Shown: one piece after another, positions 44,701 through 59,900 of the stretch | Position numbering within the stretch: position 1 is the stretch's first letter | How the letters are laid out: the number at the start of each line of letters is the position of its first letter | Source of the DNA: Styela clava | Lineage: Eukaryota | Length of the DNA: 64,000 bases | Direction: 5' to 3' | Assembly (NCBI RefSeq): GCF_964204865.1 | Contig: NC_135250.1 | Span: 7,688,001-7,752,000 of the forward strand | Translations under genes and position numbers: made by a program | Notes under the pieces: generated by a model | Seen by the model: the letters and a program-made list of their open reading frames with translations, nothing else | Told to the model about the DNA's origin: nothing | The model's database searches: none

Positions 44701-47700
44701 GACTGGTCTTATGGTTCTTTCCGCCTGGGCATAAATATGCCAAGCTTTTTTAAATCAAGGTAGTTAACTCCAAACTACAAGTTGAAGAAACTCAAGTGAT
44801 TGGCTTCCGATCGCCAAATTTACATTTTTTTGCAATAAAGTCTAATCAACAACAACACTGATGCTTCATATGGATACAATGTTCTTCCAGTTGGGACCGT
44901 TTAAAAAAAGCACATCGTCTTCAGAAGGTGAATATCTGACAGAGACACGTATTTAGAAAGGGCATATCCTGCTTCAAATGGAAACAGTATTTTAGAATCG
45001 GCATATGCGTTTTATCTGAGAGTTATGTAGCAAGCATATGACGAGCTTCATTATTCTCAAAAGCGTACATCTTTTTTGTAAGTGGCACAGCTTTTTTTAA
45101 AGGTAAGAGGTATATGTAGATCAAAGGGCACAGGCCGTTTAAATGTTTATTAATGAAAAACCCCGAGTCACGTGTTCAAACACACCTGAAAAATCCCATT
45201 GCTTTCTATCGACGGTTGCTCACACTACCTTCATCCGGTGTGGAATCACCCCGCCTACGATTTAGTGAAGAGGAACTTTACACAACTACTCCATCAGTTC
45301 ATTTGTCAAGGTAATAAATTTAATTATACTGCTGTCAAAACATTTAAGAATTTTGGTTTCGTATCGCAAACAAATTTGAAATTTAGGTGGTAAAACTTTG
45401 TTTCGTCATTTTGCTCAGTTAGGATGATGCGATCTGTACGATAAGTCAAGCAAGGTTTTGTCGAATGGGAAATGCCTGATATTTCAATTATTCTGGTGCA
45501 ACGGATTTAAAATCGATATACATATATATATTACTAAACTGGATAAGAATATAATTATGTGTATTTTTTAATAACGAACCAACGAATTTTCATCAGAAAC
45601 AAAAATTCAAATGTTAAATATCAAAAAAAAAATTGCTCTTTCAATTTAAAGTACACAACACATAACTACGTTAATCGTCTGATGGAATTTCTAACGAAAA
45701 TTCATTGGAATCTCAGAGAAATCGCAAGTTGACCTTTTTATTTTTGTGTTGTTATGCATATGAGAGTGCGAGTTATATTAGCTGTACCCCATTTAAAACA
45801 CAAACAAAATATGCGTATTTCATTTTTGCCTTTCCGTTCAGCCTATTATACGCCAGATGTGAAAAAATTCCGAGTTATTATTCAAAACTACGAGTAGGCA
45901 AATCTGAAGCGATACGGTTCAGGTCTTTATGTACTTGTAATATTTTAATAGTCATCGTAAAGAATATCTTGTATAAAGGTTTTAGGTTGAACACATAATA
46001 CCCGATACTACAAGAAGTCAACATTTGTAGACCCATAACGTGTTAACATTTTTCTTAGTCGTTTTCATTGACTGACAGCGGCCCATTCTGAAAATAGTTG
46101 TTTATTTAGTGGCAGTCGATAAGGGGCGCCACCGTGGCGCATTCCACTTGGGGAATTATTTGAATTATTTCTTCTCTCACTTGGTTGACAGAAAAAATTT
46201 CATGGGTAGAATAACGGAATATTTGCTATTTCAATTGTTTTGGTGAATAAATTGAGGAGGGGCGACACCGAGACGCGTTCTACTCGGGGAATTCATCTCA
46301 ATTATTACTTCTCTCTTTAAGTTGCTAGAAATTTTTTTTATGAATAGAATACCGGAATTTTTGCTATTGTTTTGAGAAATGTTACAAAATGGCGGACACG
46401 CTAAATAACAGTATCAGGCATATATCTTGGTAGGGAGAATTTTTCATAGTGGCAGCTGTGGACTACCTGTGTGTCGTATTTGTTTTCAGTTCGTAATATT
46501 TACAACGTTAGCATGGTCAAATAGCGCACCTCGTTCAACGAATGTAGTATTGTAGAGCGAGACTAGAAAGATTAGTGGAAAACTACTAGGATGGATTGTG
46601 ATGTCATAATACGCTATGTCATTTTTCAATATGATGACATCATTTTAGTTATTGCATCAAAACAAATAGTTTGGTTGAAATTTAGTTGAAAATTACTTGT
46701 TAGGATAGGTTTGGCTGTGACCTAAACACGGAATGTAGATGATGAGGGAAGCCCTATGCCCTCATGCTGAATCGGAAATAAAAGTCTCCCAAATTGAGTA
46801 GGCTTCAGACTTACCAAGAATATCATGATCGCGAGGAACTAGAAATCATGATTGGTTTAAAAATACAAAATTTATTAGTAAATCATAGGGTTATGATACA
46901 TAAATAGGGACAATAAAAAATAACGAAGGAAAAATTATGTGTAATTTCATAACAATCGTTTGATGACGGTAGCAAATTATTAGACACAGTGGAACAAAAC
47001 AAAAATAAAACAAATGACAGTGTTTTTTAATTAAGAAAGATGAACTCAGATAACAAAAATCAGGAAAATACAAAATTTACATTGTAATTAAAATTAGTGC
47101 GCCATTCAATTGATATTTGTTTTGATAATAGATTTATTCATGCCTAGGTTGAGCTATAAATAGGCGCTTCAGAAGTGTGTGTGCCAATGTGGGTGGAGGT
47201 AACTAATTCTGTTCGCCTACTTTACATCAAGTTACGTAAAGGGACTGGAACATATGAACAGGGGGTATATTCACTTTGCTAACACAGACAGTCTCCAAAC
47301 TCGTAATAGAACTAAAATAAGAAAAATCGGAATAACATTATGGCCCGACCCTAACCTGGAACACACACTGCGGGATTCCCTTTTTTGTATTACTTGAAGA
47401 GATGCTACGCGTTGTATACTTACTTATATGTTCCAAGTAGTTTTAAATGCTTTCATGAGAAATAGAGTGGAAAACCTGAGTCATTTGTATAACCCATGTG
47501 GATGTATAGATTATTTAAAGATATCATCGACTTGAAAATAAATAATTTTGCGTTTAAATCTTTTAATTAAGAAAATTTACATAAAACGTGTTCAATATTG
47601 CCTGAATAATCTATGAAACTTTCAAATTTCTAGCATTTCAGAAAATAGATCCGAATATATAAAGATTGGAAAAATGGCATTTCACCTGTTTCATTCAAAT

Positions 47701-47967
47701 AATCTTGAAAAATACTAAGAGGAGGAACGGAATAGCAACTGATTTTCAGACTGTGTGTGAAATCTCCTAGAAGTGAAAGTTACACAACTAAGTGAACGAA
47801 ACACATGGAAAGCGAGGCGAGTGAGCACATACAAGAAGAAAGTGAATAAAATATAAATAACTAAATAAATAAATAATATTATTAATAAATAATTCCTACG
47901 TTCAGATTTCAGAGCAAAAGTTGATGAATATATATATATCACGGTCCAACTAGCGTTTTTTGTGGAA

Positions 47968-48679
47968 TCAACTTCTTAAAACACAACGGCATCCAATTGT
48001 GATGTTTCGCACCACAATCTCATGTCCATGATGAAAAAACTTTTCGTCAACATTGACTGGTTCTACTTCGTATTTTAAGCTTCGGTCTCGTATCACTGTT
48101 TCCGCCACTGGATCCCAGCATATTGGCAAACATATTGTAGTCGTGAAATTGAAGTTTTTACAAACGACAAGAACGCTAGGATGCTGAAGTTCAAATCCAT
48201 TGACATCGAGATCAAGAGGTTTGTCTAGCACGGGTTGACAACAATTTTCGATTGCCTCTGTCGAACTGGAAACATAATTTATATAATTTGTACTTAAAAT
48301 AATACTCTATCATTCACATAATTTGAAAGCCAAAAAAGTCATAAAACTTGGCTGGTGAGCGAGATCTTTTAAAACCTTCTGTACAAGCACCTAATACAGT
48401 ATCTAATGTAGTTAGATCATATTGAAAGGCGAGAAGTCGGCGTAATTACCACGTCCTTTCGTTCGGTTACCAGTTCATGTCGAAGACGGGGTCTTTTAAC
48501 CAGTTAATCGTTCAAGATTCCTGGACTTGGGTAATGAAAGAAGCTGTAAATTATCTATAAATATTATAATTCACAAATTAAAGAAAAGATAAAAAATATT
48601 TCTCGTAACTTTACCTGAAATCAAAAGTCGACGAAACTTGGAACAGGAAACTCGCGATAAAAAGGCTCGATAAAAACAT
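47968..48679 (-). CDS. Secreted cystine-knot protein, divergent IL-17-like, copy A (120 aa)
   Basis: Exon 1 48679-48615 encodes a signal-peptide-like MFLSSLFIASFLFQVSSTFDF. Exon 2 48265-47968 is in frame through a GT-AG intron. HPSVL...ICLPICWDP...D.SL...EPV...NITIGCRCV echoes the IL-17 pattern YPSVI..C....C...D...NS.PI...VGCTCV. The gene model is solid; the family assignment is tentative. Confidence 0.75.
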
Positions 48680-49341
48680 TTTGACGTTCTTCTCTGGTAA
48701 TTGTAGACTGATAGAAAATACTTAAATGTTCCATCCATTTATACGTTTTTCTCTTACGCAATTTTTTTTTCCCAACAATGAAATAAAGAATTTAAATTAT
48801 TTGGTAGAACAAATTGAACGCTTGTGATGTAATCTTGTTTCATCATCTCTATTAACAATATTTAATTTTGCTTCACGGATACCGCGATAAAAAATTGTAG
48901 GTGATTTTTATCGCCCTTGTTTCGTGACTATAGTTCTATATGACAATATTAACAATTATAACTACCTGGTGATATTGCTATATATTTTTCTCAAAATGGG
49001 GAAAGAGTAAAAAGCTATTTACGACGCAACAAGAGGCTGATATGAAAACATCGTCAATAAAAGTTTATGCGTACTCAATTTTCATTTATTATGAAATCAG
49101 TTTACTTAATATTTCAATTACGAATGTGAGTTGCCAGTAAAATAGCAGAAGAAATATACTTGAGGGTTTTTAAAACCACCGCTGTGGAATATTATTTGCT
49201 GACTTTCTATTTGTCCAATAAATATCAGTATTTGTGAAGAATGTTAGTTATTGTTACGATTTACTCCGTGAAATATAAACGGAATTACTATTAACTTTTA
49301 CAGTAACATGTATTTTATTTCACTCATCATAGAAAATAATT

Positions 49342-49441
49342 GGTACTCCTGAAGTAGTGAATCAAGATGGTGGGCACCCTAAACTGAACAACTACTGCGT
49401 TCCGGTGTCCGCCATCTTGGTTCAAATACTTTGGGAGTACC
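49342..49441. mobile_element. 100-bp palindromic MITE
   Basis: Long imperfect inverted repeat GGTACTCCTGAAGTAGTGAATCAAGATGGTGGGCACC / GGTGTCCGCCATCTTGGTTCAAATACTTTGGGAGTACC. Absent from the matching position in unit 2. Confidence 0.75.
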
Positions 49442-50352
49442 AAATATTTTAGAATAAATAAATAGTATAAAAATATCTCAATTGTTTTTTTCAACTTTTT
49501 TCAGATAATACCGATTCTTTGATTCATATATATTTCACAATGTTCTCATGGCGCAATATTCTATTATTCTATTATTTACTTATTCTATTATATTTCACGT
49601 ATTACGACACGGCTGATGAAACTTTTACTGATAGAAAATCCATCTTTGGTATTCGTGTCACAATATCAAGCTCGCAAACTTGGATCATTATTCATGATTT
49701 TGTCATTTTTACATGCAACGAACGAATCAAATTCCAATGTATGGTCCAAGCTTTATCAGTGGTTATGGAGTATTATAATTTTACTATTTAACGTGCTTGC
49801 ATATCGACCCAGACTGCGAATAGTATTTGTTTAATCTGATCTGAATTTGACCCGTTTTAACGCGCTCTAACACTGCATGGATAAAGTATGCCAATACAAT
49901 ATAGTCATCACAAAGCTTTTTTTTTTATGACACATGTTTATTCAAGGTGTAATCAAAATTTTTAAGCATCATATAAAAGAAAACAAACTTCTTATATAAA
50001 ATCATAGCTACAGCCTCGATTCAAGCACTTTGTAGGATAATGCAATGCTGAATAAGTTGCCAGTTTTAACGTAATACCAATCCCCGCACATCAAACTGAA
50101 TGAATTATCGGAAAGGCTTAAATTTGGGTCTCAAATTTGTGAACGTTGCACTTTTAATAATTTAGGGAATTTTTAATTGTGTGATATATATATATATATA
50201 ATTATATTAACGCTAAACCGTTAAATTAACGATTGAATTAAGAAAGTTCGATGTGCGAGGGTTCAACTGCCTCCTGACTGGAACTTTTTCCATAGTGGTA
50301 ACCAGTTATAAAAAAACATTGAGCTTTGAAAAATGAACCAAATCACACGTAC

Positions 50353-51325
50353 CGTTACTCCTTTGTCTCTCAGTGCTTTCGAAGGAGCTAATACATCAAC
50401 TCCTGCTTTTCCGTCAGTGATGACAAATACTACATCGTTGACGTCTGGTCGGTTTCCGTTTTCTGGAGTCAGACTTACCTCAAGAGCGTGCTGGAGAGCA
50501 TTTCATGTTAGGGATCCTATTGAAATAATATGAATAAAGTTTCTCTTTGTAAACGATACCATACATGGTCAATCCTCCAATTATTCGAGAATTATTTTGT
50601 TCATTTGCCAGGTCTTCGGCTGTTTGGTGTTAACGATTATAATAGCTAAGGTGAAAAAATTTCAACTTTGCGGTTACTAACGGTAAGCTAAGAGTTTCAT
50701 TTCAATAGAAAAATTCACAAAAACGCAAATAAATAAATAAATATAATGCTCGTCGTCCACACACCCCTGCCATTGTACTCAAACTCATTGGATGCCTGGA
50801 AAAATTTCTCAAAGTCGTCCGGGAAGCTGTTTAAAAATATTTGAGACTCCATATCTACTTCATTGTTGTACCAAAACATAGCAAAGTTGACAGCTGTTCT
50901 GTTGATTATGAAAGACCTGAAGCGAATAAATATAGACGATCCGTCACATTTCTTATAGTCCTAGTTAGTAATTTTTTCTTCGAATCTTTGTTTGAATCTA
51001 AGCTTTGGTGCCGTTTTGTATACTAAATACAGGCACTCTATTTTATTGTATATTCTCATTGCACAAAATGTGGCAACATAGAAATGAGGTTAAGGCCTTG
51101 GTCACGCATGAATAGTACTTTGCTAGAAGTTCGAGAATTTTCGCGCCAATTTCCGGCGTTTCGGCGATGTTAGTGTAAGGGCTTAGTGGACAGTATTTTC
51201 GACTGTTTATGCCTCGAAAGCAGAGTGCAGTTAGCACGAATGCAGTTAGCATGAACCAATTTTCAATACCAATTGACGAGGAAAAGTTCATAACATCGAC
51301 AACATCTACGAATGCATATGGAGGA
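50353..51325 (-). pseudogene. Orphan partial copy of the VWA exons of the CCP-VWA gene
   Basis: Paralogous to 57377-58741 but broken. It starts inside the exon (no acceptor), the MIDAS MDSSSS has become MNFSSS, the exon-1 donor is deleted, there is an in-frame TGA in exon 3 (GGA TCC CTA ACA TGA), and the last exon is missing. Confidence 0.85.
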
Positions 51326-53704
51326 AACTTGAAAAATCCTATTGAATCCTATTGTATATCGACGGTTGCTCACACTACCTTAATCCGGTGTAGAATCACC
51401 CCGCCTACGAGTAAGGGAAGAGAAACTTCATCAAATTTATATCACTACTCCATTAGTCTATTTTTCAAGGTGATAAATTTAATTATTCTGCTGTCAAAAC
51501 ATTTAAGAATTTTTGGTTTCGTATCGCAAACAAATTTGAAATTTAGGCGGTAAAACTTCGTTTTGTAATTCGCTCAGTTAGGATGATGCAATCTGTACGA
51601 CAAGTCAAGCAGCGTTTTGTCAAATGAGAAATGGCTAATATTATAATTATTCTGGCACAACGGATTTCAAATATATATATTAAGTAGACCGGATAAGAAT
51701 ATAATTATGTGCATTTTTTCATAACGAACCATCAAATTTTCATCGGATGCAGCAATTCAAATGTTAAATATCAAATAAATAAAAATTTGCTGCTTGCAGT
51801 TGCTTCATTGCTACGTCTCATGGAATTTCCAACAAAAACTTATCAGACTGTCCACTGACTTTTAGTGACGAAATCCCAGAGACATCTCGAGTTGACCTTC
51901 TTTAATTTTTGTGTTTTTATGCATACGAGGGCGCGAGTTTTATTGACTGTACTCAATGTAAAACACAATCAAAATTAAGCGTATTGTATTTTTGTCTTTC
52001 CGTTTAGCCTATCGGGTTGTCTATTATACGCCAGATGTAAATAAATCCCTAGCTATGATTTGAAACTACAAGTAGGCAAATCGGAAGCGATACGGTTCAG
52101 GTTGTAATATTTTGATAGCTATCGTAAAGAATATCTTGTATTAAGGTTTTAGATTGAACACATAATACCCGATACTACAAAAAGTCAACATTTGTAGACT
52201 CATAAGCTGTTAATATTTAAAGCGGTTTTTATTGATTTTTCTTAGTCGTTTTCATTGTGTGACAGCGACCCATTCAGAAAATGGTTTTTTTTATTAAGTG
52301 GCAATCGGTAAACTGAGAAGGGGCGCCATCGAGCCGCATTCCACTTGGGGAAGTTATCTCAATTGTTTCTTCTCTCACTTAGTTGACAGAAAAAAGATTT
52401 CATGGACGGAACAAAATGTTACAAAATGGCGGACACGCGAAATAACGTGACCAGGCAAATTTCTTGGTAGGGAGAAATTTTCATAGTGGCATCTGTAACT
52501 ACCTATGTCTCGTATTTGTTTTCAAGACGTAATATTCACAACCTTAGCATGGTCCAATAGCGCACCTCGTTCAACGGGCGTAGTATTGTAGAGCGAGACT
52601 AGAAAGATGAGTGAAAAACTACTCGAGTGGATCGTGATGTCAAAATATGCTATGTCATTTTTCAACGTGATGGTATCATTTTCTTCATTGCATCAAATCA
52701 AATAGTTTGATTAGAATTTTGTTGAAAATTAATTTTTAGAATAGATTTGGTAGTGAGCTAAACACGGAATTTGGTTGATGAAAGAAGCCTTATATACTCA
52801 TGCTGAATCGAATACAAAGTCTCGCAAATCGAGTTCAGACTTACCGAGAAAATACTGATCGTGAAAAAATAGAAATCATGATCGGTTCAAAAATATAAAA
52901 TCATCCGGTATGATACCTAAATAAGTACAATAAATAAACTAACGAAAAATAATGTGTAATTTCATAACAATCGTTTGATGACGGTAGAAAATTATTAGAC
53001 ACAGTGGAACAAAACAAAAATAAAACAAATGACATTGTTATTTGATTGAAAAGGAAGATGAACTTGGATAACAAATATCAGAAAAATACAAATTTACATT
53101 GTAATTGAAAGTAGTGCGCCATTCAATTGATAATTGTCTAGTAGAAACATATTTAATGATCACCCTTCTCCAAAGAGCTCTATATTTAGTCTATAAACGA
53201 CCAATATAAATTTACTGACTTTGTTTTGCAGTCTTGAAGAGACGCTACGTGTTGTATACTTATATGTTTGAGGTAGTTGTAAATGATTTCATAAGGGAAA
53301 GAGTGAAAAACCTGAGCCATTTGTATAACCCATGTGGACGTATAGATTATTTGAAGATATCATCGACTGGAAATTAAATAATTTTGCGGTTATATCATTT
53401 AATTGAGGAAATTTCGCCTGTTTCATTCAATATATCTTGAAAAGTACTGATGGGATAAACGGAATAGCAACTGATTTTTAGACGGTGTGTGAAATTTTTC
53501 AATACACATCTGCTAGAAATGAAGTCACGCAACGAAGTGAACGAAACACCCTCAGGAATAGTGAGGCGGGTGAGCACATACGAGAAAAAAAGTGAATAAA
53601 TATAAATAACTAAATAAATACTATTATTAATAAATAATTCCTGCGTTCAAATTTCAGAACAAAAGTTGATATATATATGTTGCAGTTCAAGTAGCGTATA
53701 GGAA

Positions 53705-54414
53705 TTAACGTCTCAAAACACAACGGCATCCAATTGTGATGTTTGACACCAGAATCCACTCCCCATCATGAAAAAACTGTTTGTCAACATTGACCGGTTC
53801 GACTTCATATTTTAGATTTCGGTCTCGTATCACTGTTTTTGTCACTGGATCCCAGCATATTGGCAAACATATTGTAGTCGTAAAATTGAAGTTGTTACAA
53901 AGGACAAGAACGCTAGGATGCTGAAGTTCAAATCCATTTACATCGAGATCAAGAGGTTTGTCTAGCACGGGTTGACAACAATTGTCGATTGCCTCTGTCG
54001 AACTGGAAACATAATTTGTACGTATAATATTAATCTATTATTCACATAATTTGAAAGCCAAAAGAAGCCATGGCTCTTGGCTGGTGAACCAGTTTTAAAA
54101 ACTTTTTGTAGTTTGAAAAGCATAAATAGGATTTAGGTTATGAACATTTTGAGTCAGTGTGAGGAAGAAAGGCGAGAAAGCTGCTTAATTACCACGCCCT
54201 TTCGTTCGGTTACCAGTTCATGTCGAAGACGGGGTCTTTTAACCAGGTAATCGTTCCAGATTCCTGGACTAAATTATCTACGAGTATAAATATTATATTT
54301 CACAAATTTAGAAAAAGATAAAAAATATTTCTCGTAACTTTACCTGAAATCAAAAGTCGACGAAACTTGGAACAGGACACTCGCGATAAAAAGGCTCACT
54401 ATTTTAAAAAACAT
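53705..54414 (-). CDS. Secreted cystine-knot protein, divergent IL-17-like, copy B (122 aa)
   Basis: Exon 1 54414-54344 (MFFKIVSLFIASVLFQVSSTFDF) and exon 2 54002-53705. All 7 Cys and both N-glycosylation sequons (NFT, NIT) are shared with copy A. Confidence 0.75.
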
Positions 54415-56927
54415 TTTGACGTTCTTCTTTTGTAATTGTAGACTAATAGAAAATACTTGACAAGCCCACTCAATTTATATATACATATTTCTCTTCCGCA
54501 AATTTTTTTTTCAACACTGAGAAAAACAAGAATCGTCCTTGTTTCGTGACTATAGTTCTATATGACAATATTAACGATTATAACTACCTGGTGGACGGTG
54601 GTATTGCTATATATATTTCTCAAAATTGGGAAAGAGTAGAAACTATCTACGACGCAACAAGAGGCTGATATGGAAACATCGTCAATAAAAGTTTATGTGT
54701 CTTTACTTTTAATTTATTATTAAATTAGTTTACTTAAGAAATATTTCAATTACGAATGTGAGTTGCCAGTAAAATAGCAGAAGAAATATACTTGAGGGTT
54801 TTTGAAACCACCGCTGTGGAATATTATTTGCTGACTTTCTATTTGTCCAATAAATATCAGTATTTGTGAAGAATGTTAGTTATTATTACAATCTACTCCG
54901 TGCAATATAAACGGAATTACTATCAAATTTATACAGTAACATGTATTTTATTTCACTCATTATAGAAAATAATTTAATAAAAATTGTAAGCAAAGTTGTT
55001 GCTGCTGTTATCTTCTTCGTTAGTTGTTGATTAGTTACTTCATTTAATTATATCTTAGACTTATACAATCTAGACTCCAATATAAAACAATTATATTAAT
55101 CAGAAGTTATACGTGTTCAAATTAGGAACTCTTGTTAATTTTATATAACAGATCAACACAGTTTCCATAATTTAATAATATTTTATCGCTCCGTTCAAAC
55201 AAATTACGATCATCAATAACAAGACTTTATAAAACACAACTTAAATCATAAAGTATAAACTGTACCTCAAACAGATTCGTCTATGAGATAACAACATAAT
55301 TAGCTAGAACAGCTAACCTTTCTCCCACCACTCTATTTTTCTTTGTCCTGATCAGTCTATTAAAAATGGAACTGGAGGTTTCTCGATTTTGTGGATAATT
55401 TATCTATCTTTATTTATTACTTTTTCGGGAAGAAGGTTTTTATAGACCAATCAAATTCTAGTTTGTCTCGTTTTCGATAAGAGGAATTTGGGATGCGCAC
55501 GATTAGGTCAAATATCTTGAAAAATTATGAAATGACCTATAGTTTATGTTAAAAATGGCGATGATTTCATTGTCCCGTGAGTATGAATCTTTGTTTTTTG
55601 CTCATGGAAATTTACAGGTGCTCCGTCGAAAGTCAAAGTTTTAGGATTAATTGGGGGTAATATCCGATGATTTAAAGTGACAAATTGGCAAAAATCTTCA
55701 ATCGGGTGTATAATACACCCCAGGGTGTACCATAAAGTTTGAAGGGTGTACCACATCGATAGGGTGTACCGTACCGAATGTTGTAGGGTACACACTAACA
55801 CATGATATGTTAATTGAATAGGTTAATATTGACAGTGGTATACTGGTATGTAATATCTAACGGTTTAACCTATACTCAAACTTAAGGCTAACGGGCTAAG
55901 GCTAAGTTATGAAAAAGCTCAGATAAGGAATTTGGATATTGTTCTCAGGGTTATCATAAAAGTTGTTCATTTTGTTCGGCCTCATTCCAAAAGCATAGAA
56001 TGTTTCCAGAAATTGGCGCATGGAGAGACATAGAAGCAAATAAATTGAGGTCCGAAACAAGGGGATTACCTCACTTTGCGCAACTGAATGATGGAATTCA
56101 ATTAATGAACTATTGCGTCGACATATTAAAAACGTAGGATTGGCGAGGTTTACCAGATTTTGAGAGAGTAGTATTTGTTCAAACTGATCTGAATTCAACC
56201 CGTTTTAACGCGCTCTAACACTACATGGATAAAAAAAATGCAAATACTATAGTCATCACAAAGCCGCCATCCCTTTACAACTATAGACACTTTTATGATA
56301 CATGTTTATTCAAGGTCTAATCACAATTTTTAAGCATCATATGAAAGCAAACAAACTTTTCGTATAAAATCATCGCTACAGCTCGATGCTAGATTTAAGC
56401 ACTTTGTAGGATAATGCAATGCTGAATACGTTGTCAGTTTTATCAAATACCAAACCCCGCACAAACTGAATGAATAATCGGAAAGGTTTAAAATTGGGTC
56501 TCAAATTTGTGAACGTTGTACTTTCAGTAATTTAGGGAATTTCTAATTGTGTGATATATATAATCCTATTAACGCTAAATTGACGTTCTCTATCTAGTGA
56601 TTGTTGCTTAAATAAATTAATTTTACACTTGAATTGTGGTAACAAAATATTTTAGTTTTGAGGAGCGCGAGACTACTTTCAATATCTGGCCGTGAAACAC
56701 ATGTAGATTTTAGGCAAACAGTAAAAATCTGTCTGATCGTGGTGGATCCGTGTGAAAACGTTTTATAAATATTCAGCGATAAATATAGCATTCTCGATGC
56801 CAAACATGTAAAGCATTTTGGGGTATATATATTGTCTGTTCATTTGTGGAATGTTACGGCTACACAAAAATGATAAATGTTCTATAAAAACTACTACGTT
56901 GTAACAATTCATTCAAAAATATAATTT

Positions 56928-59900
56928 TCAAGTGCATGGTTGTCCACAAATTGTTTTACTGAGTTTTAACCCAAATTCTGATGTCAGTCCAGCGAATCCA
57001 GCTTCAGCAATCACAAGATTATCCTGTTTACCCGCTATTTGTTGTAATTGCTTCAAATCGAGAAATCCTCTCAGTGGCTTAATTCCAAGTACAAGCACCT
57101 GAGTAAACAAATAAATTATAAAACATTCACAGTGAAGGTTTCATATTCAAGATGAAATCTGCGCGATTGAACAAAGTTCGATTTGCGAAGATTTTATTTT
57201 TATGCTCAAGTTGGATAAGATGAATAATATACCAGTATATGTTCACACTTTTGTCACAATTATAAAATCCTTTCACAAAAGTTTCATTCGCTTTAACTAC
57301 TTCCTGACTGGAACTTTTTTCATAGTGGTAACCAGTTATAAAACATTGAACTTGGAAAAATAACGAAAACACGTACCGTTACTCCTCTTTCTCTCAATGC
57401 TTGCGAAGGAGCTAATACATCATCTCCTGCTTTTCCGTCAGTGATAACAAATACTACATCTTTGATGTCTGGTCGGTTTCCGTTTTCTGGAGTCAAACTT
57501 ACCTCAAGAGCGTGCTGGAGAGCCTTTCCTGTTAGGGTTCCTGTTAAAATATGATTGAAGTTTCTCTTTGTAAACCAGGGGTTCTCAACCACTTTCCTGT
57601 TAATTGTACCCCCGAATCACGAAGCAATCAACCCGAACCCCCAGTAATCAGACACCAAAAAAAATTGTAATATATTGACCGACATGCCCATTTTTGTCAA
57701 TGGCAGTAAACCCATGCTGAATGTAGGATTCATCATACTTTCCTTCGCTGATGAGGACATAACTAAATTAGTTTTTGTTATTTTGCATTCTCCTCTGGTA
57801 GTAAAATATATTCAATAAATAGCAACAAATCAAAACGCAACTGCCATCAGAGTACCCCTGGGAATCTCCCCGTGAACCACTAGGGGTTCGCGAACCTCAG
57901 GTTAAAAAACCCTGTTGTAAATGATACCATTACATGATCAAAATTTCTCCAATTTTTGAGAATATTTCTGTTCATTTACCAGTACTTCGGCTGTTAGGTG
58001 TCAACGTTTATAATAGCTAGAGTCAAAAAGTTTCAACTTTGTCTGTTAGTAGCGCTCAGCTAAAAATCTTATTTCAATGAAAAAAAAAAAAACGCAACAA
58101 TAAAATAAATATAATGCTCTTCGTCCACTCACCCCTGCCATTGTACTCAAACTTATTGAATGCCTGGACAAGTTTCTCGACGTCATCCGGAAAGCTGTTT
58201 AAAAATATTTGAGACTCCGTATCTATTTCATTGTTGTACCGAAACATAGCAAAGTTGACAGCTGTTCTGTCGATTATGAAGGACCTGGAGCAAATAAATA
58301 TAGACGATCCGTCACATTTCTTTTTGTCAAAGTTAGTGATTTCTCTGAGTCTTTGTATAAATCTAAGCAATGGTGCCGTTTTGTATACTAAATATATTTT
58401 ATTGCATATTTCCATTCAACAAATTGTGGCAACACAGAAACAAAGTCATGGCATTGGTCACGCATGGTTAGTACTTTGCTGAACAGAAGTATGAGAATTT
58501 TCGCGCCAAATTTCTGGCGTTTCAGCGATGTTAGTGGAAAGGGTTGTCTCAATTTCCGACTGTTTTTATCCTCGAAAGTATAGGAAACAGAATAGGTATG
58601 TAGGGTATTAATATTTTTATCTCGTTACTAGTTCACCTGAGTATCCCTTCGACGAATGCAGTTAGCATGAACCAATTTTCAATACCAATTGACGAAGAAG
58701 AGTCCATGACAACGACAACATCTACCAGTGCATATGGAGGACACGATCCTAAAAAGTTTGTAGAATTTTGATAATTAGACATTTTGTACCTTAAAAATGA
58801 TTTACATAGAGTACCTTTTTACTAACTTGAACAGCATGGTTTAGGCAACGTCCATCGTTGGTTTATCTGGCAGACTGTTCGAAGTCTTTCAGCCGGGTAG
58901 ACATTGTATCCTTCATCAATACATTCAAATACGCAGGTGGATCTGACGGCAGTTCCGTCTGTACAAACAATTCTACCGTGTTCTAAATCCCCTTGGTCAT
59001 CACAGTATAATTCTGAAAAGAAAGGTAGCTATAAAATATAGCGGATATCAGGTAGGACGGATAAATAAAAATTCCAAATACTTTACTTTCACAAATGGGC
59101 AATGGCGCACTCCATTCCCCATTCCCAAGACATTCACTGAACTGTTCTCCAACTAATTTTGTTGTAAAGTGGCAGGTCACTCTAGAAAATAAACACATGG
59201 TTATATATAATGGGATGGTATTTCTTATGTAGTTTATCATGTATTTTGCGTTCAATTTTCTTTGTTTTAGAGTAAGCGCTTGATTTTTCAGTATTAGCAT
59301 TTTTTGATTACCTTACCTGAAACGACTGCATTGTAAAAACAGTTGCCAATATAGAGTCTGGGGCAAAAAATGGTTGATTTAAAAATTACTGCTCAATCTA
59401 CTACAACTCACGCGCATCGACTCGAGTAATTCACTCCATTTGTGCACTTTGTTGAACCATCTATAACTTCGCTTCTAGAAGGACAGTAAATAGCTGTAAA
59501 TTAAATTAGAGATAAAGCCAAAGTTTTTTTTTTAGTGTTTAAAAAGTATGTTTCAAATCTACGTAATATGATTACAACAAATCTATATGAACGATCAGAC
59601 TCATAATAAACCATTTTAATAAACTTTATATACTATGGATTGTAACCACATTTGTGGTACTCTTGTGTGCGCGCTGAACTTGTTCTTATTAGTACTTACA
59701 TATGTTTCCCCGAAATAGCAATATGGATATAACATGGGTGGCAATAAGTAATTGTACAATAAAAACCATTATCCCTACCTTCACACACAGGTAAATCGTC
59801 ACTCCATTCTCCAATTGGTAAACATTCGCTATCTGTCACACCCACCATTTTGAATCCAAGGTAACAGAAAGCTCTGTCATTAAAAATTAACTATGATATT

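What the first reader, a model, noticed from the sequence alone, without database searches (positions are those of the whole stretch)
47968..54414. Tandem pair of small secreted proteins resembling a divergent IL-17/cystine-knot cytokine family
Seen: two intact two-exon genes of 120 and 122 aa, each with a signal-peptide exon, 7 Cys (CC, C, CxxxC, CxC) and a terminal NITIGCRCV. The ORF track misses their N-termini. Known: IL-17s end in VGCTCV and have PSVI..CxxxxC, and the family is expanded in invertebrate deuterostomes. Here the spacing is CxxxC, there is an extra VCKNFNFTTT segment, and the second finger is shorter. The odd Cys count suggests disulfide-linked dimers, possibly A/B heterodimers. 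Inference: a possibly undescribed lineage-specific cytokine or hormone family.
Basis: partly seen in the sequence, partly recalled or inferred. Interest (0 to 1): 0.8.

Follow-up and report, generated by a model that had tools for sequence, protein, structure and literature searches.

The report
Two unannotated divergent IL-17-like genes
The sea squirt Styela clava carries two tandem, apparently intact but unannotated genes for small secreted proteins that belong to a very divergent branch of the interleukin-17 cytokine superfamily; their transcription and function remain untested.

Summary
Two minus-strand, two-exon genes are present: A (48679-47968, 120 codons) and B (54414-53705, 122 codons). 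Each has a hydrophobic leader exon and a 98-residue exon with 7 Cys ending NITIGCRCV.

The genome is Styela clava. Four paralogues are identical or nearly identical over their second exons to NCBI "uncharacterized" S. clava proteins. A and B themselves are absent from the protein collections.

Pfam IL17 and PDB sequence searches do not recognise them. Three results still place them in the IL-17 superfamily:
- The AlphaFold models (pLDDT 77-80) match only cystine-knot growth factors, with IL-17A, F and 25 on top (Z 5.1-5.9).
- Profile-profile comparison with 20 canonical S. clava IL-17 exons gives 94% probability (E 1.7e-7). It aligns CxxxC with CxxxxC and GCRCV with GCTCV. Shuffled columns and a TGF-beta control score about 10 against 42.
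- The Cys pattern is the olfactorean "T2" incomplete knot, plus an extra N-terminal Cys pair.

The family has about 35 loci in this genome and relatives in other, unnamed organisms. This scan had already found it on other DNA (s1-813323, s1-822883).

No spliced transcript of A or B was seen. Dimerisation and receptor binding are inferred. I class it as a new variant of a known kind, of moderate interest.

The parts
48615..48679 (-). Gene A exon 1: ATG at 48679-48677, 21 codons plus 2 bases of a split Ser codon. It encodes a hydrophobic leader and is followed by donor GT at 48614-48613.
   Evidence: Sequence read directly. The mean Kyte-Doolittle hydropathy of the first 15 residues is 1.94. No SignalP tool was available.
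48266..48614 (-). Gene A intron, 349 nt, GT...AG, phase 2.
   Evidence: The same intron phase and position occur in the paralogues and agree with the NCBI models P0001-P0004.
47968..48265 (-). Gene A exon 2: the whole mature domain (98 aa) plus the stop. Cys at positions 8, 9, 35, 45, 49, 92 and 94. Motifs CLPIC-x-DP and GCRCV.
   Evidence: AF2 models; fold matches; hhalign.
54344..54414 (-). Gene B exon 1: ATG at 54414-54412, 23 codons plus 2 bases. Hydrophobic leader, 2 codons longer than in gene A.
   Evidence: mean hydropathy 2.29.
54003..54343 (-). Gene B intron, 341 nt, GT...AG, phase 2.
   Evidence: It is 89% identical to the gene A intron over aligned bases, with 68 gap columns.
53705..54002 (-). 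Gene B exon 2: mature domain of 98 aa plus the stop, 87% identical to gene A in protein and 90.8% in DNA, with no indels.
48737..48743 (-). TATAAAT about 60 nt upstream of the gene A ATG; a candidate core promoter.
   Evidence: Sequence only. The same motif lies at the same distance upstream of gene B. Its function is inferred, not tested.
54473..54479 (-). TATAAAT about 60 nt upstream of the gene B ATG; a candidate core promoter.
   Evidence: Sequence only.
45207..51340 (.). Tandem duplication unit 1. It carries gene A and a partial copy (about 49818-51325) of the 3' part of the neighbouring VWA gene.
   Evidence: blastn of the window against itself: 79-92% identity to unit 2.
51357..58741 (.). 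Tandem duplication unit 2. It carries gene B and runs into the 3' part of the (CCP)n-VWA gene.

Best explanation
A and B are a recent tandem duplicate pair. They belong to a Styela clava (ascidian) gene family of small secreted proteins that is a highly divergent branch of the IL-17 cytokine superfamily.

Proposed anatomy:
- A short first exon supplies a signal peptide.
- The single second exon encodes the whole mature domain. It folds into two beta-hairpin "fingers" tied at their base by two disulfides.
- Those disulfides are inferred as C45-C92 and C49-C94. They correspond to Cys 2/5 and 3/6 of the knot.
- A family-specific third pair, C9-C35, probably pins the N-terminal segment to finger 1.
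- A and B alone carry a seventh Cys (C8). It may be free or may make an interchain bond.

Proposed function, by analogy with IL-17: the proteins act as extracellular dimeric ligands, most plausibly for one of the SEFIR-domain IL-17 receptors encoded in the same genome.

What is shown and what is inferred:
- Shown: the gene structure, the family, the predicted fold and the profile-level homology.
- Inferred: secretion, disulfide pairing, dimerisation, the receptor and any immune or hormonal role.
For: Gene models and frame conservation:
- The gene models were read directly from the sequence.
- Exon 2 has 0 indels against 68 gap columns in the intron. The exon-1 indel is in frame. dN/dS is 0.45, Fisher p = 0.05.

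Family:
- There are 10 intact paralogous exons with six invariant Cys.
- An extended profile finds 35 loci in this genome.
- Four paralogues equal NCBI S. clava XP models that have signal peptides.

Fold:
- Model 1 has pLDDT 77.4 and pTM 0.62. Model 2 has pLDDT 79.6 and pTM 0.66, with all five models at 77-80.
- In an unbiased scan of 48,161 chains, only 40 reach Z >= 2 and the top 33 are all cystine-knot growth factors. The leaders are IL-17A (Z 5.3), IL-25 (Z 5.1, rmsd 2.6 A over 75 residues) and NGF (Z 5.0).
- With model 2, the 50 best re-aligned chains are all IL-17A/F/25, at Z 5.2-5.9. IL-17F 6hgo_B gives Z 5.9, rmsd 2.3 A over 70 residues.

Homology:
- hhalign of the family (A3) against 20 canonical S. 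clava IL-17 last exons (A2) gives probability 93.8%, E 1.7e-7 and score 42.6 over 53 columns from C45 to C94.
- 200 column shuffles give a mean score of 10.2, sd 2.2, maximum 16.3. The reversed alignment scores 15.9.
- The S. clava TGF-beta alignment, which shares the CxxxC...CxC pattern, scores 9.4 at probability 0.1%.
- A2 is genuine IL-17. It matches PF06083 at 36-54 bits, and all 25 of its PDB hits are IL-17A/F/25 at E about 1e-11.

Other support:
- The Cys pattern agrees with the T2 type that PMC11087794 describes as the only type in tunicates and vertebrates.
- Seven SEFIR-domain exon matches show that candidate receptors or adaptors exist in this genome.
Against: - Pfam IL17 (PF06083) does not match A or B even at E <= 10. 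None of the family loci appears in the genome-wide PF06083 scan. Only one of the 17 family members reaches E = 0.26.
- PDB sequence and profile searches find no IL-17.
- All Foldseek E-values are above 0.2.
- Z of 5-6 is middling, and NGF is tied within 1 Z unit in the wide search.
- The ring spacing is CxxxC, not the CxxxxC of IL-17.
- The gene structure differs. Here the mature domain sits in one exon, whereas canonical S. clava IL-17 domains have an intron before the R-F-P motif.
- No spliced transcript of A or B was seen in three probable RNA runs. The only contig there is unspliced and at depth 2.4.
- A and B are not in the public protein collections searched, so no gene predictor called them.
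- Substitution divergence in exon 2 (9.2%) is barely lower than in the intron (10.9%).
Confidence: 0.7

Rival explanations
1. The family belongs to another cystine-knot ligand lineage, such as neurotrophin/Spaetzle-like or Trunk/PTTH-like hormones. On this reading its likeness to IL-17 reflects the shared superfamily fold, not specific descent from IL-17.
For: - NGF (1sg1_A) scores Z 5.0 with 25% identity over 69 residues, tied with IL-17A and IL-25 in the wide scan.
- PTTH, Spaetzle, Norrin and TGF-beta follow at Z 3.4-4.5.
- NGF and Spaetzle head the Foldseek list.
- PMC11087794 states that IL-17, Trunk, PTTH and CFSH are hard to separate by phylogeny.
- Pfam IL17 fails to match.
Against: - hhalign links the family to canonical IL-17 exons at 94% probability, with both Cys pairs and the C-x-D-P-x-T motif in register.
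- The same comparison with a TGF-beta alignment is null.
- The PF00243 (NGF) genome scan hits none of the family loci.
- With the better model, all 50 top chains are IL-17s.
- The knot lacks Cys 1/4, like olfactorean IL-17s. NGF, Spaetzle and PTTH all keep that pair (general knowledge).
- According to PMC11087794, Trunk is conserved only up to amphioxus.
Confidence: 0.12
2. A and B are young duplicates that are silent or decaying: unexpressed gene copies whose reading frames are intact only because the duplication is recent.
For: - No spliced contig was found in runs X1, X6 or X7. The only contig is unspliced and at low depth.
- The two genes are absent from NCBI-derived and other protein collections, although their paralogues are annotated.
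- Exon-2 substitution divergence is close to that of the intron.
- The dN/dS of 0.45 is only marginally below 1 (p = 0.05).
Against: - At about 10% divergence, both copies keep the ATG, both splice sites, the open frame, all 7 Cys, the stop position and a TATAAAT at the same distance.
- Exon 2 has no indel, while the intron has 68 gap columns and the 3' flank has 38.
- Both indels seen in exon 1 (A versus B, and an allele of A in run X1) are 6 nt, so they keep the frame.
- The RNA evidence is weak. It rests on contigs only, from small runs of unknown tissue, and immune cytokines are often silent without a stimulus.
Confidence: 0.2
3. The proteins are CC-chemokine-like: a CC doublet, a third Cys and a fourth Cys followed by D-P, as in CCL2.
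For: The best PDB hit of the first family profile was CCL2 (4zk9_B). It aligns CC, C and the F-x-T...C-x-D-P stretch, at E = 0.56.
Against: - The hit is not significant, and it disappears with the broader profile A3.
- The CC doublet is not conserved. All other members have a single Cys there.
- Pfam IL8 matches neither the proteins nor the family loci.
- The models are all-beta with a long C-terminal hairpin and no C-terminal helix. No chemokine appears among the structural matches.
Confidence: 0.02
4. The proteins have an IL-17-derived fold but a function that is not cytokine signalling. Examples would be a secreted antimicrobial or toxin-like effector, a decoy that blocks canonical IL-17 signalling, or a reproductive or self-recognition factor.
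For: - The family is large, fast-evolving and tandemly expanded: 35 loci, with 25-46% identity between subfamilies.
- A/B differences cluster at the finger-2 tip and in the loop after C-x-D-P.
- Some distant members have lost the last Cys.
- Arthropod relatives of IL-17 (CFSH, PTTH) act as hormones.
Against: Nothing tested here discriminates. Every characterised protein with this fold and Cys pattern is a receptor ligand (general knowledge). SEFIR-domain genes are present in the genome.
Confidence: 0.15

Closest known systems
Canonical IL-17 family (Pfam PF06083; human IL-17A/F/IL-25; Ciona and Styela IL-17s), 'T2' knot type of PMC11087794
   Same: - Small secreted protein with a leader peptide.
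- Predicted four-strand, two-finger cystine-knot fold. The best structural matches are IL-17F, A and 25, at Z up to 5.9.
- Two strand-2 to strand-4 disulfide positions, with G-C-x-C-V near the C-terminus.
- A C-x-D-P-x-T motif after the second knot Cys, shared with several S. clava IL-17s.
- Cys 1/4 is absent.
- Tandemly expanded in the same genome.
   Different: - Not recognised by the Pfam model.
- One residue fewer between the first two knot Cys (CxxxC instead of CxxxxC or C-x-C-x-x-C).
- No R-(F/Y)-P motif.
- An additional conserved Cys pair (C9, C35) in the N-terminal part.
- No Cys in finger 2 for the interchain bond of IL-17A/F.
- The whole mature domain lies in one exon.
The same divergent family elsewhere in S. 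clava (NCBI LOC120338308, LOC120338090, LOC120329234, LOC120329322, all 'uncharacterized'; scan findings s1-813323 and s1-822883)
   Same: - Same exon structure, the same six invariant Cys, and the motifs F-E-P, F-x-F-T-T, C-L-P-x-C-x-D-P and G-C-R-C-V-L.
- A and B are 42-46% identical to the C13 8.0 Mb cluster and about 30% identical to the C1 8.9 Mb trio.
   Different: - A and B form their own subclade.
- They carry a seventh Cys (the CC doublet) and an N-I-T sequon before the last knot Cys.
- They lack the 6-residue insertion in the finger-1 loop.
- They are not annotated in the collections searched.
Neurotrophins / Spaetzle / PTTH-Trunk (other cystine-knot ligands)
   Same: Overall two-finger knot fold. 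NGF scores Z 5.0, PTTH 4.0 and Spaetzle 3.4.
   Different: - Those families keep the threading Cys 1/4 disulfide and have different ring sizes.
- There is no sequence or profile signal to them.
- hhalign links the family to IL-17 instead.

Membership tests
IL-17 (Pfam PF06083 / IL-17 superfamily) | Match to the Pfam IL17 model at or above the gathering score (24 bits) | tested here: not met
   A and B give 0 families at E <= 10. The genome-wide PF06083 scan lists 33 loci, 32 of them over the cut-off and none from this family. One of 17 family members reaches E = 0.26.
IL-17 (Pfam PF06083 / IL-17 superfamily) | Detectable homology to bona fide IL-17 domains at profile level | tested here: met
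   hhalign of A3 against A2 gives probability 93.8%, E 1.7e-7, over 53 columns. Column shuffles reach at most 16.3 against the observed score of 41.5-42.6. The TGF-beta control gives probability 0.1%. A2 is validated as IL-17.
IL-17 (Pfam PF06083 / IL-17 superfamily) | Cystine-knot growth-factor fold with two beta-hairpin fingers | tested here: met
   The AF2 models have pLDDT 77-80. The top 33 of 48,161 chains are knot growth factors. The top 50 re-aligned chains are all IL-17A/F/25, at Z 5.2-5.9. This is a predicted structure with moderate Z, not an experimental one.
IL-17 (Pfam PF06083 / IL-17 superfamily) | Olfactorean T2 Cys pattern: Cys 2/5 and 3/6 present (CxxxxC ... CxC), Cys 1/4 absent | tested here: inconclusive
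   C45, C49, C92 and C94 are invariant and align with the IL-17 knot Cys. No Cys lies between C49 and C92. However, the spacing is CxxxC, and the disulfide connectivity itself could not be read from the model. The pattern is defined in PMC11087794.
IL-17 (Pfam PF06083 / IL-17 superfamily) | Dimeric ligand that binds the double-FN3 ectodomain of a SEFIR-domain IL-17 receptor | not testable with these tools
   Only the presence of seven SEFIR exon matches in the genome was shown. No multimer prediction or binding assay was available.
CC chemokines (Pfam PF00048 IL8) | Match to the IL8 model; conserved CC...C...C tetrad; three-strand sheet plus a C-terminal helix | tested here: not met
   There is no Pfam hit. 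The CCL2 hit at E 0.56 was lost with the broader profile. The CC doublet is not conserved. The models have no helix and no chemokine appears in the fold searches.
TGF-beta/DAN/glycoprotein-hormone type knots (8-residue ring CxGxC + CxC with threading Cys 1/4) | Ring of CxxxC + CxC threaded by a third disulfide whose second Cys lies between the ring motifs; profile similarity | tested here: not met
   The ring spacing is the same. However, no Cys lies between C49 and C92, and hhalign against the S. clava TGF-beta alignment scores 9.4 at probability 0.1%. Structural Z is 3.5-4.5, below the IL-17 matches.
Neurotrophin (Pfam PF00243 NGF) | Match to the NGF model; three knot disulfides | tested here: not met
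   The PF00243 genome scan gives two weak hits elsewhere and none at the family loci. There is no Pfam hit for the proteins. The structural Z of 5.0 is tied with IL-17, so the fold alone does not exclude this family.

The most novel reading that the evidence does not exclude
The A/B type and its roughly 35 relatives could be an ascidian-specific ligand family that split from IL-17 and acquired its own biology. One version: covalent homo- or heterodimers through the extra Cys8 of A and B, signalling through a receptor other than the canonical IL-17Rs, or antagonising them. That would add a second, hidden IL-17-derived signalling system to the closest invertebrate relatives of vertebrates.
Probability: 0.15. 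Interest if true: 0.65.

Novelty: new variant of a known kind. Interest (0 to 1): 0.45.

Why it matters
Tunicates are the sister group of vertebrates, and IL-17 is one of the few cytokine systems shared across animals. The textbook count for ascidians is three IL-17 genes, in Ciona.

This genome holds at least 32 canonical IL-17 loci. It also holds a second family of about 35 loci that standard domain models miss. Automated immune-gene inventories of tunicates therefore undercount IL-17-type ligands.

A and B add two unannotated members with a distinctive odd cysteine. If expressed, they are convenient candidates for three tests:
- whether such divergent ligands still use IL-17 receptors;
- whether they form covalent dimers;
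- what drove the expansion.

The claim is limited. It extends a known superfamily, and the same family had already been noticed elsewhere in this genome by this scan.

Tried and rejected
- Pfam on each exon-2 product and on all 17 family members found nothing usable.
- A PDB sequence search with one protein and with two profiles gave only chance-level hits: SARS-CoV-2 spike S1 at E 0.15 and CCL2 at E 0.56.
- I followed the CCL2 lead as a chemokine hypothesis and rejected it. The CC doublet is not conserved, the fold is wrong, and the hit is lost with the broader profile.
- Foldseek against the PDB gave no hit at E <= 0.001. The VIA aligner was needed to obtain ranked Z-scores.
The species behind the seven non-Styela relatives (P0005-P0010, P0013) therefore could not be named.
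  - The ESM Atlas could not read new sequences.
- Transcript evidence was sought and not found. One run search and one read-laying run showed no spliced contig for A, and no coverage of B exon 2 in the probable RNA runs. Those runs are contigs only, so this is weak negative evidence.
- The joined 120- and 122-aa products were never assembled or submitted, so no whole-protein signal-peptide or whole-protein fold test was run.
- Literature searches found no description of this family. The queries were S. clava + IL-17; IL-17 + tunicate + cystine knot; and IL-17 + ascidian + expansion.

Full report
**What is in the sequence**

Both genes lie on the minus strand.

Gene A starts at ATG 48679. Its exon 1 ends at 48615 (donor GT at 48614-48613). 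A 349-nt intron ends in AG at 48267-48266. Exon 2 runs from 48265 to the stop at 47970-47968.

Gene B has the same layout: ATG at 54414, exon 1 to 54344, a 341-nt intron, and exon 2 from 54002 to 53705.

The intron splits a Ser codon after its second base (phase 2).

Exon 1 encodes a short hydrophobic leader. The mean Kyte-Doolittle hydropathy of the first 15 residues is 1.9 for A and 2.3 for B. Exon 2 encodes 98 residues with Cys at 8, 9, 35, 45, 49, 92 and 94, ending in NITIGCRCV plus three residues. A TATAAAT lies about 60 nt upstream of each ATG.

The mechanical ORF list begins at an internal GTG, so it misses the N-termini.

I never joined the exons, so no tool saw the full 120- or 122-aa products.

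**Whose genome, and how big the family is**

The window is G000:C1:7,688,001-7,752,000 of a 377-Mb assembly.

A six-frame search of that genome with exon 2 of A found ten intact paralogous exons:
- A and B;
- five in a cluster on C13 at 8.01-8.05 Mb, together with two broken copies;
- three on C1 at 8.88-8.90 Mb.

All ten have a phase-2 acceptor one codon before an S-x-E motif.

Their alignment (A1) has six invariant Cys: C9, C35, C45, C49, C92 and C94. It also conserves F-E-P, F-x-F-T-T, C-L-P-x-C-x-D-P and G-C-R-C-V-L. Only A and B have the extra C8.

A word-indexed search of 5.8 billion proteins with this alignment returned four proteins. All are "uncharacterized protein LOC..." of Styela clava. 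Their second-exon parts are identical or nearly identical to four of the paralogous exons. The genome is therefore S. clava, or something indistinguishable from it.

A and B themselves were not returned by that search. Nor were they returned by the exhaustive HMM search of 1.84 billion cluster representatives. They are unannotated.

The exhaustive search found only 11 proteins at E <= 0.001. Seven of them (P0005-P0010 and P0013, from ENA and Logan assemblies) are at most 47% identical to any S. clava locus I fetched. They therefore come from other organisms.

A broader profile (A3, 17 sequences) finds 35 loci in the S. clava genome. These include a large cluster on C13 at 8.96-9.18 Mb and copies on C6.

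**What family it is**

Sequence models do not recognise the proteins:
- Pfam gives no hit for A or B at E <= 10.
- PDB sequence and profile searches give only chance-level hits.
- A genome-wide scan with Pfam IL17 (PF06083) finds 32 loci over the cut-off, and none of them belongs to this family.

Three independent lines nevertheless place the family in the IL-17 superfamily.

(i) Predicted fold.
- AlphaFold2 with A1 gave pLDDT 77.4 and pTM 0.62.
- With A3 it gave pLDDT 79.6 and pTM 0.66, and all five models fell at 77-80.
- The model is all-beta, with a short hairpin at residues 30-43 and a long hairpin at 65-96.
- In a search of 48,161 representative chains that does not depend on Foldseek, only 40 reach Z >= 2, and the first 33 are all cystine-knot growth factors. 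The leaders are IL-17A (Z 5.3), IL-25 (Z 5.1, rmsd 2.6 A over 75 residues) and NGF (Z 5.0).
- With the second model, the 50 best re-aligned chains are all IL-17A, IL-17F or IL-25, at Z 5.2-5.9. IL-17F 6hgo_B gives Z 5.9, rmsd 2.3 A over 70 residues.
- These Z values are moderate and Foldseek E-values are poor. The fold class is well supported. The subfamily is not decided by structure alone.

(ii) Profile-profile homology.
- I cut the last exons of 20 canonical S. clava IL-17 loci and aligned them as A2.
- As a positive control, the A2 profile hits 25 PDB sequences. All are IL-17A, F or 25, at E about 1e-11.
- hhalign of A3 against A2 gives probability 93.8%, E 1.7e-7 and score 42.6 over 53 columns. 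C45 and C49 align with the first and last Cys of the IL-17 C-x-C-x-x-C motif (one residue deleted), D-P-x-T aligns with D-P-x-T, and G-C-R-C-V aligns with G-C-T-C-V.
- Controls: 200 column shuffles of A3 score 10.2 +/- 2.2 (maximum 16.3), and the reversed alignment scores 15.9. An alignment of seven S. clava TGF-beta domains, which share the CxxxC...CxC ring pattern, scores 9.4 at probability 0.1%.
- The signal is therefore specific to IL-17. It is not a by-product of cysteine spacing.

(iii) Cysteine pattern.
- PMC11087794 classifies IL-17 knots by their disulfides. [quoted passage not shown]
- The present family has exactly the 2/5 and 3/6 positions, with no Cys between C49 and C92.
- It also has a family-specific pair, C9 and C35, in the N-terminal segment and at the end of strand 1.

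**Rivals considered**

- Chemokine. The first profile's best PDB hit was CCL2 (E 0.56), aligning CC...C...C-x-D-P. This reading fails. The CC doublet is unique to A and B, the hit vanishes with the broader profile, Pfam IL8 does not match, and the models have no C-terminal helix.
- Neurotrophin, Spaetzle or PTTH. These are not excluded by fold, since NGF is tied in Z. They have no sequence signal, and they keep the Cys 1/4 bond that is missing here.
- TGF-beta-type knots. These are rejected by the hhalign control.

**Are A and B working genes?**

They sit in a tandem duplication. The units are about 45,207-51,340 and 51,357-58,741, at 79-92% identity. Each unit also copied the 3' part of the neighbouring (CCP)n-VWA gene.

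Comparing A with B:

| Region | Identity | Gap columns |
|---|---|---|
| Exon 2 | 90.8% | 0 in 295 nt |
| Intron | 89.1% | 68 |
| 3' flank | 86% | 38 |

dN/dS between A and B is 0.45 (10 synonymous and 17 non-synonymous differences; Fisher p = 0.05). The amino-acid differences cluster in the loop after C-x-D-P and at the tip of finger 2.

The exon-1 length difference between A and B is 6 nt. An allele of A seen in run X1 also carries a 6-nt insertion in exon 1. The reading frame is thus protected, although substitutions are only mildly constrained.

Transcription is not shown:
- Three probable RNA runs of the species contain no spliced contig.
- The single contig over exon 1 (48506-48703, depth 2.4) continues into the intron.
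- B exon 2 is not covered.

These are small, contig-only data sets of unknown tissue, so this is weak negative evidence. I put the chance that A and B are silent copies at about 0.2.

**Mechanism proposed**

- Shown: two intact leader-plus-domain genes, membership of a conserved multi-gene family, a predicted cystine-knot fold, and profile homology to IL-17.
- Inferred from established IL-17 biology: cleavage of the leader; secretion; disulfides C45-C92, C49-C94 and C9-C35; parallel dimerisation; and binding to a double-FN3/SEFIR receptor. The genome has seven SEFIR exon matches.
This could not be tested, because no multimer prediction was available.

**Novelty and standing**

No paper in the held library describes the family, and NCBI calls its annotated members "uncharacterized".

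This scan had already met the same family on other DNA of this genome:
- s1-813323 covers the C1 8.88-8.90 Mb trio, which I recovered independently as L008-L010.
- s1-822883 covers a ten-gene cluster on another contig.

The present finding therefore adds two unannotated members, forming a distinct subclade with an odd cysteine, to a divergent IL-17-like family. I rate it a new variant of a known kind, of moderate interest.

Noticed in passing
window 49333-49450: A 118-nt element with 24-nt terminal inverted repeats (88% complementary). It is present in duplication unit A but absent at the matching place of unit B. Its core, 49393-49446, occurs in a very large number of contigs in all four runs laid, on both strands, at summed word depths of 6,500-217,000. 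It looks like a MITE-type mobile element inserted after the duplication.
   Followed up: partly
window 49818-51325 (minus strand; VWA-like frame about 50330-50500): This is a partial copy, at 83-92% identity, of 56166-58741, the 3' part of the neighbouring (CCP)n-VWA gene. It was carried along by the tandem duplication. It translates into a recognisable VWA stretch but is cut off from the rest of the gene, so it is probably a pseudogene fragment.
   Followed up: partly
window 48669-48671 (gene A exon 1): Run X1 holds a low-depth contig that matches gene A at 48506-48703, with one mismatch and a 6-nt (in-frame) insertion in the signal-peptide exon. It appears to be an allele of A with two extra codons, similar to B.
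   Followed up: no
G000 C3 2.19-2.23 Mb and 14.84-14.87 Mb, C5 14.72-15.08 Mb, C2 18.35-18.38 Mb and others (L016-L035): S. clava has at least 32 loci that match Pfam IL17 over the cut-off, mostly in tandem clusters. That is far more than the three IL-17 genes usually cited for Ciona.
   Followed up: partly
G000 C13 9.06-9.13 Mb (L061-L065): Distant members of the family end in T-C-R-Y instead of C-R-C-V. They have lost the last knot cysteine, so their knot can have at most one of the two ring disulfides.
   Followed up: no
G000:C4:9435844-9435954: This is the only match to the chemokine model PF00048 in the genome (26.5 bits, over the cut-off). It has two TAA stops inside a 37-codon frame, so it is probably spurious or a relic. 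It was not examined.
   Followed up: no
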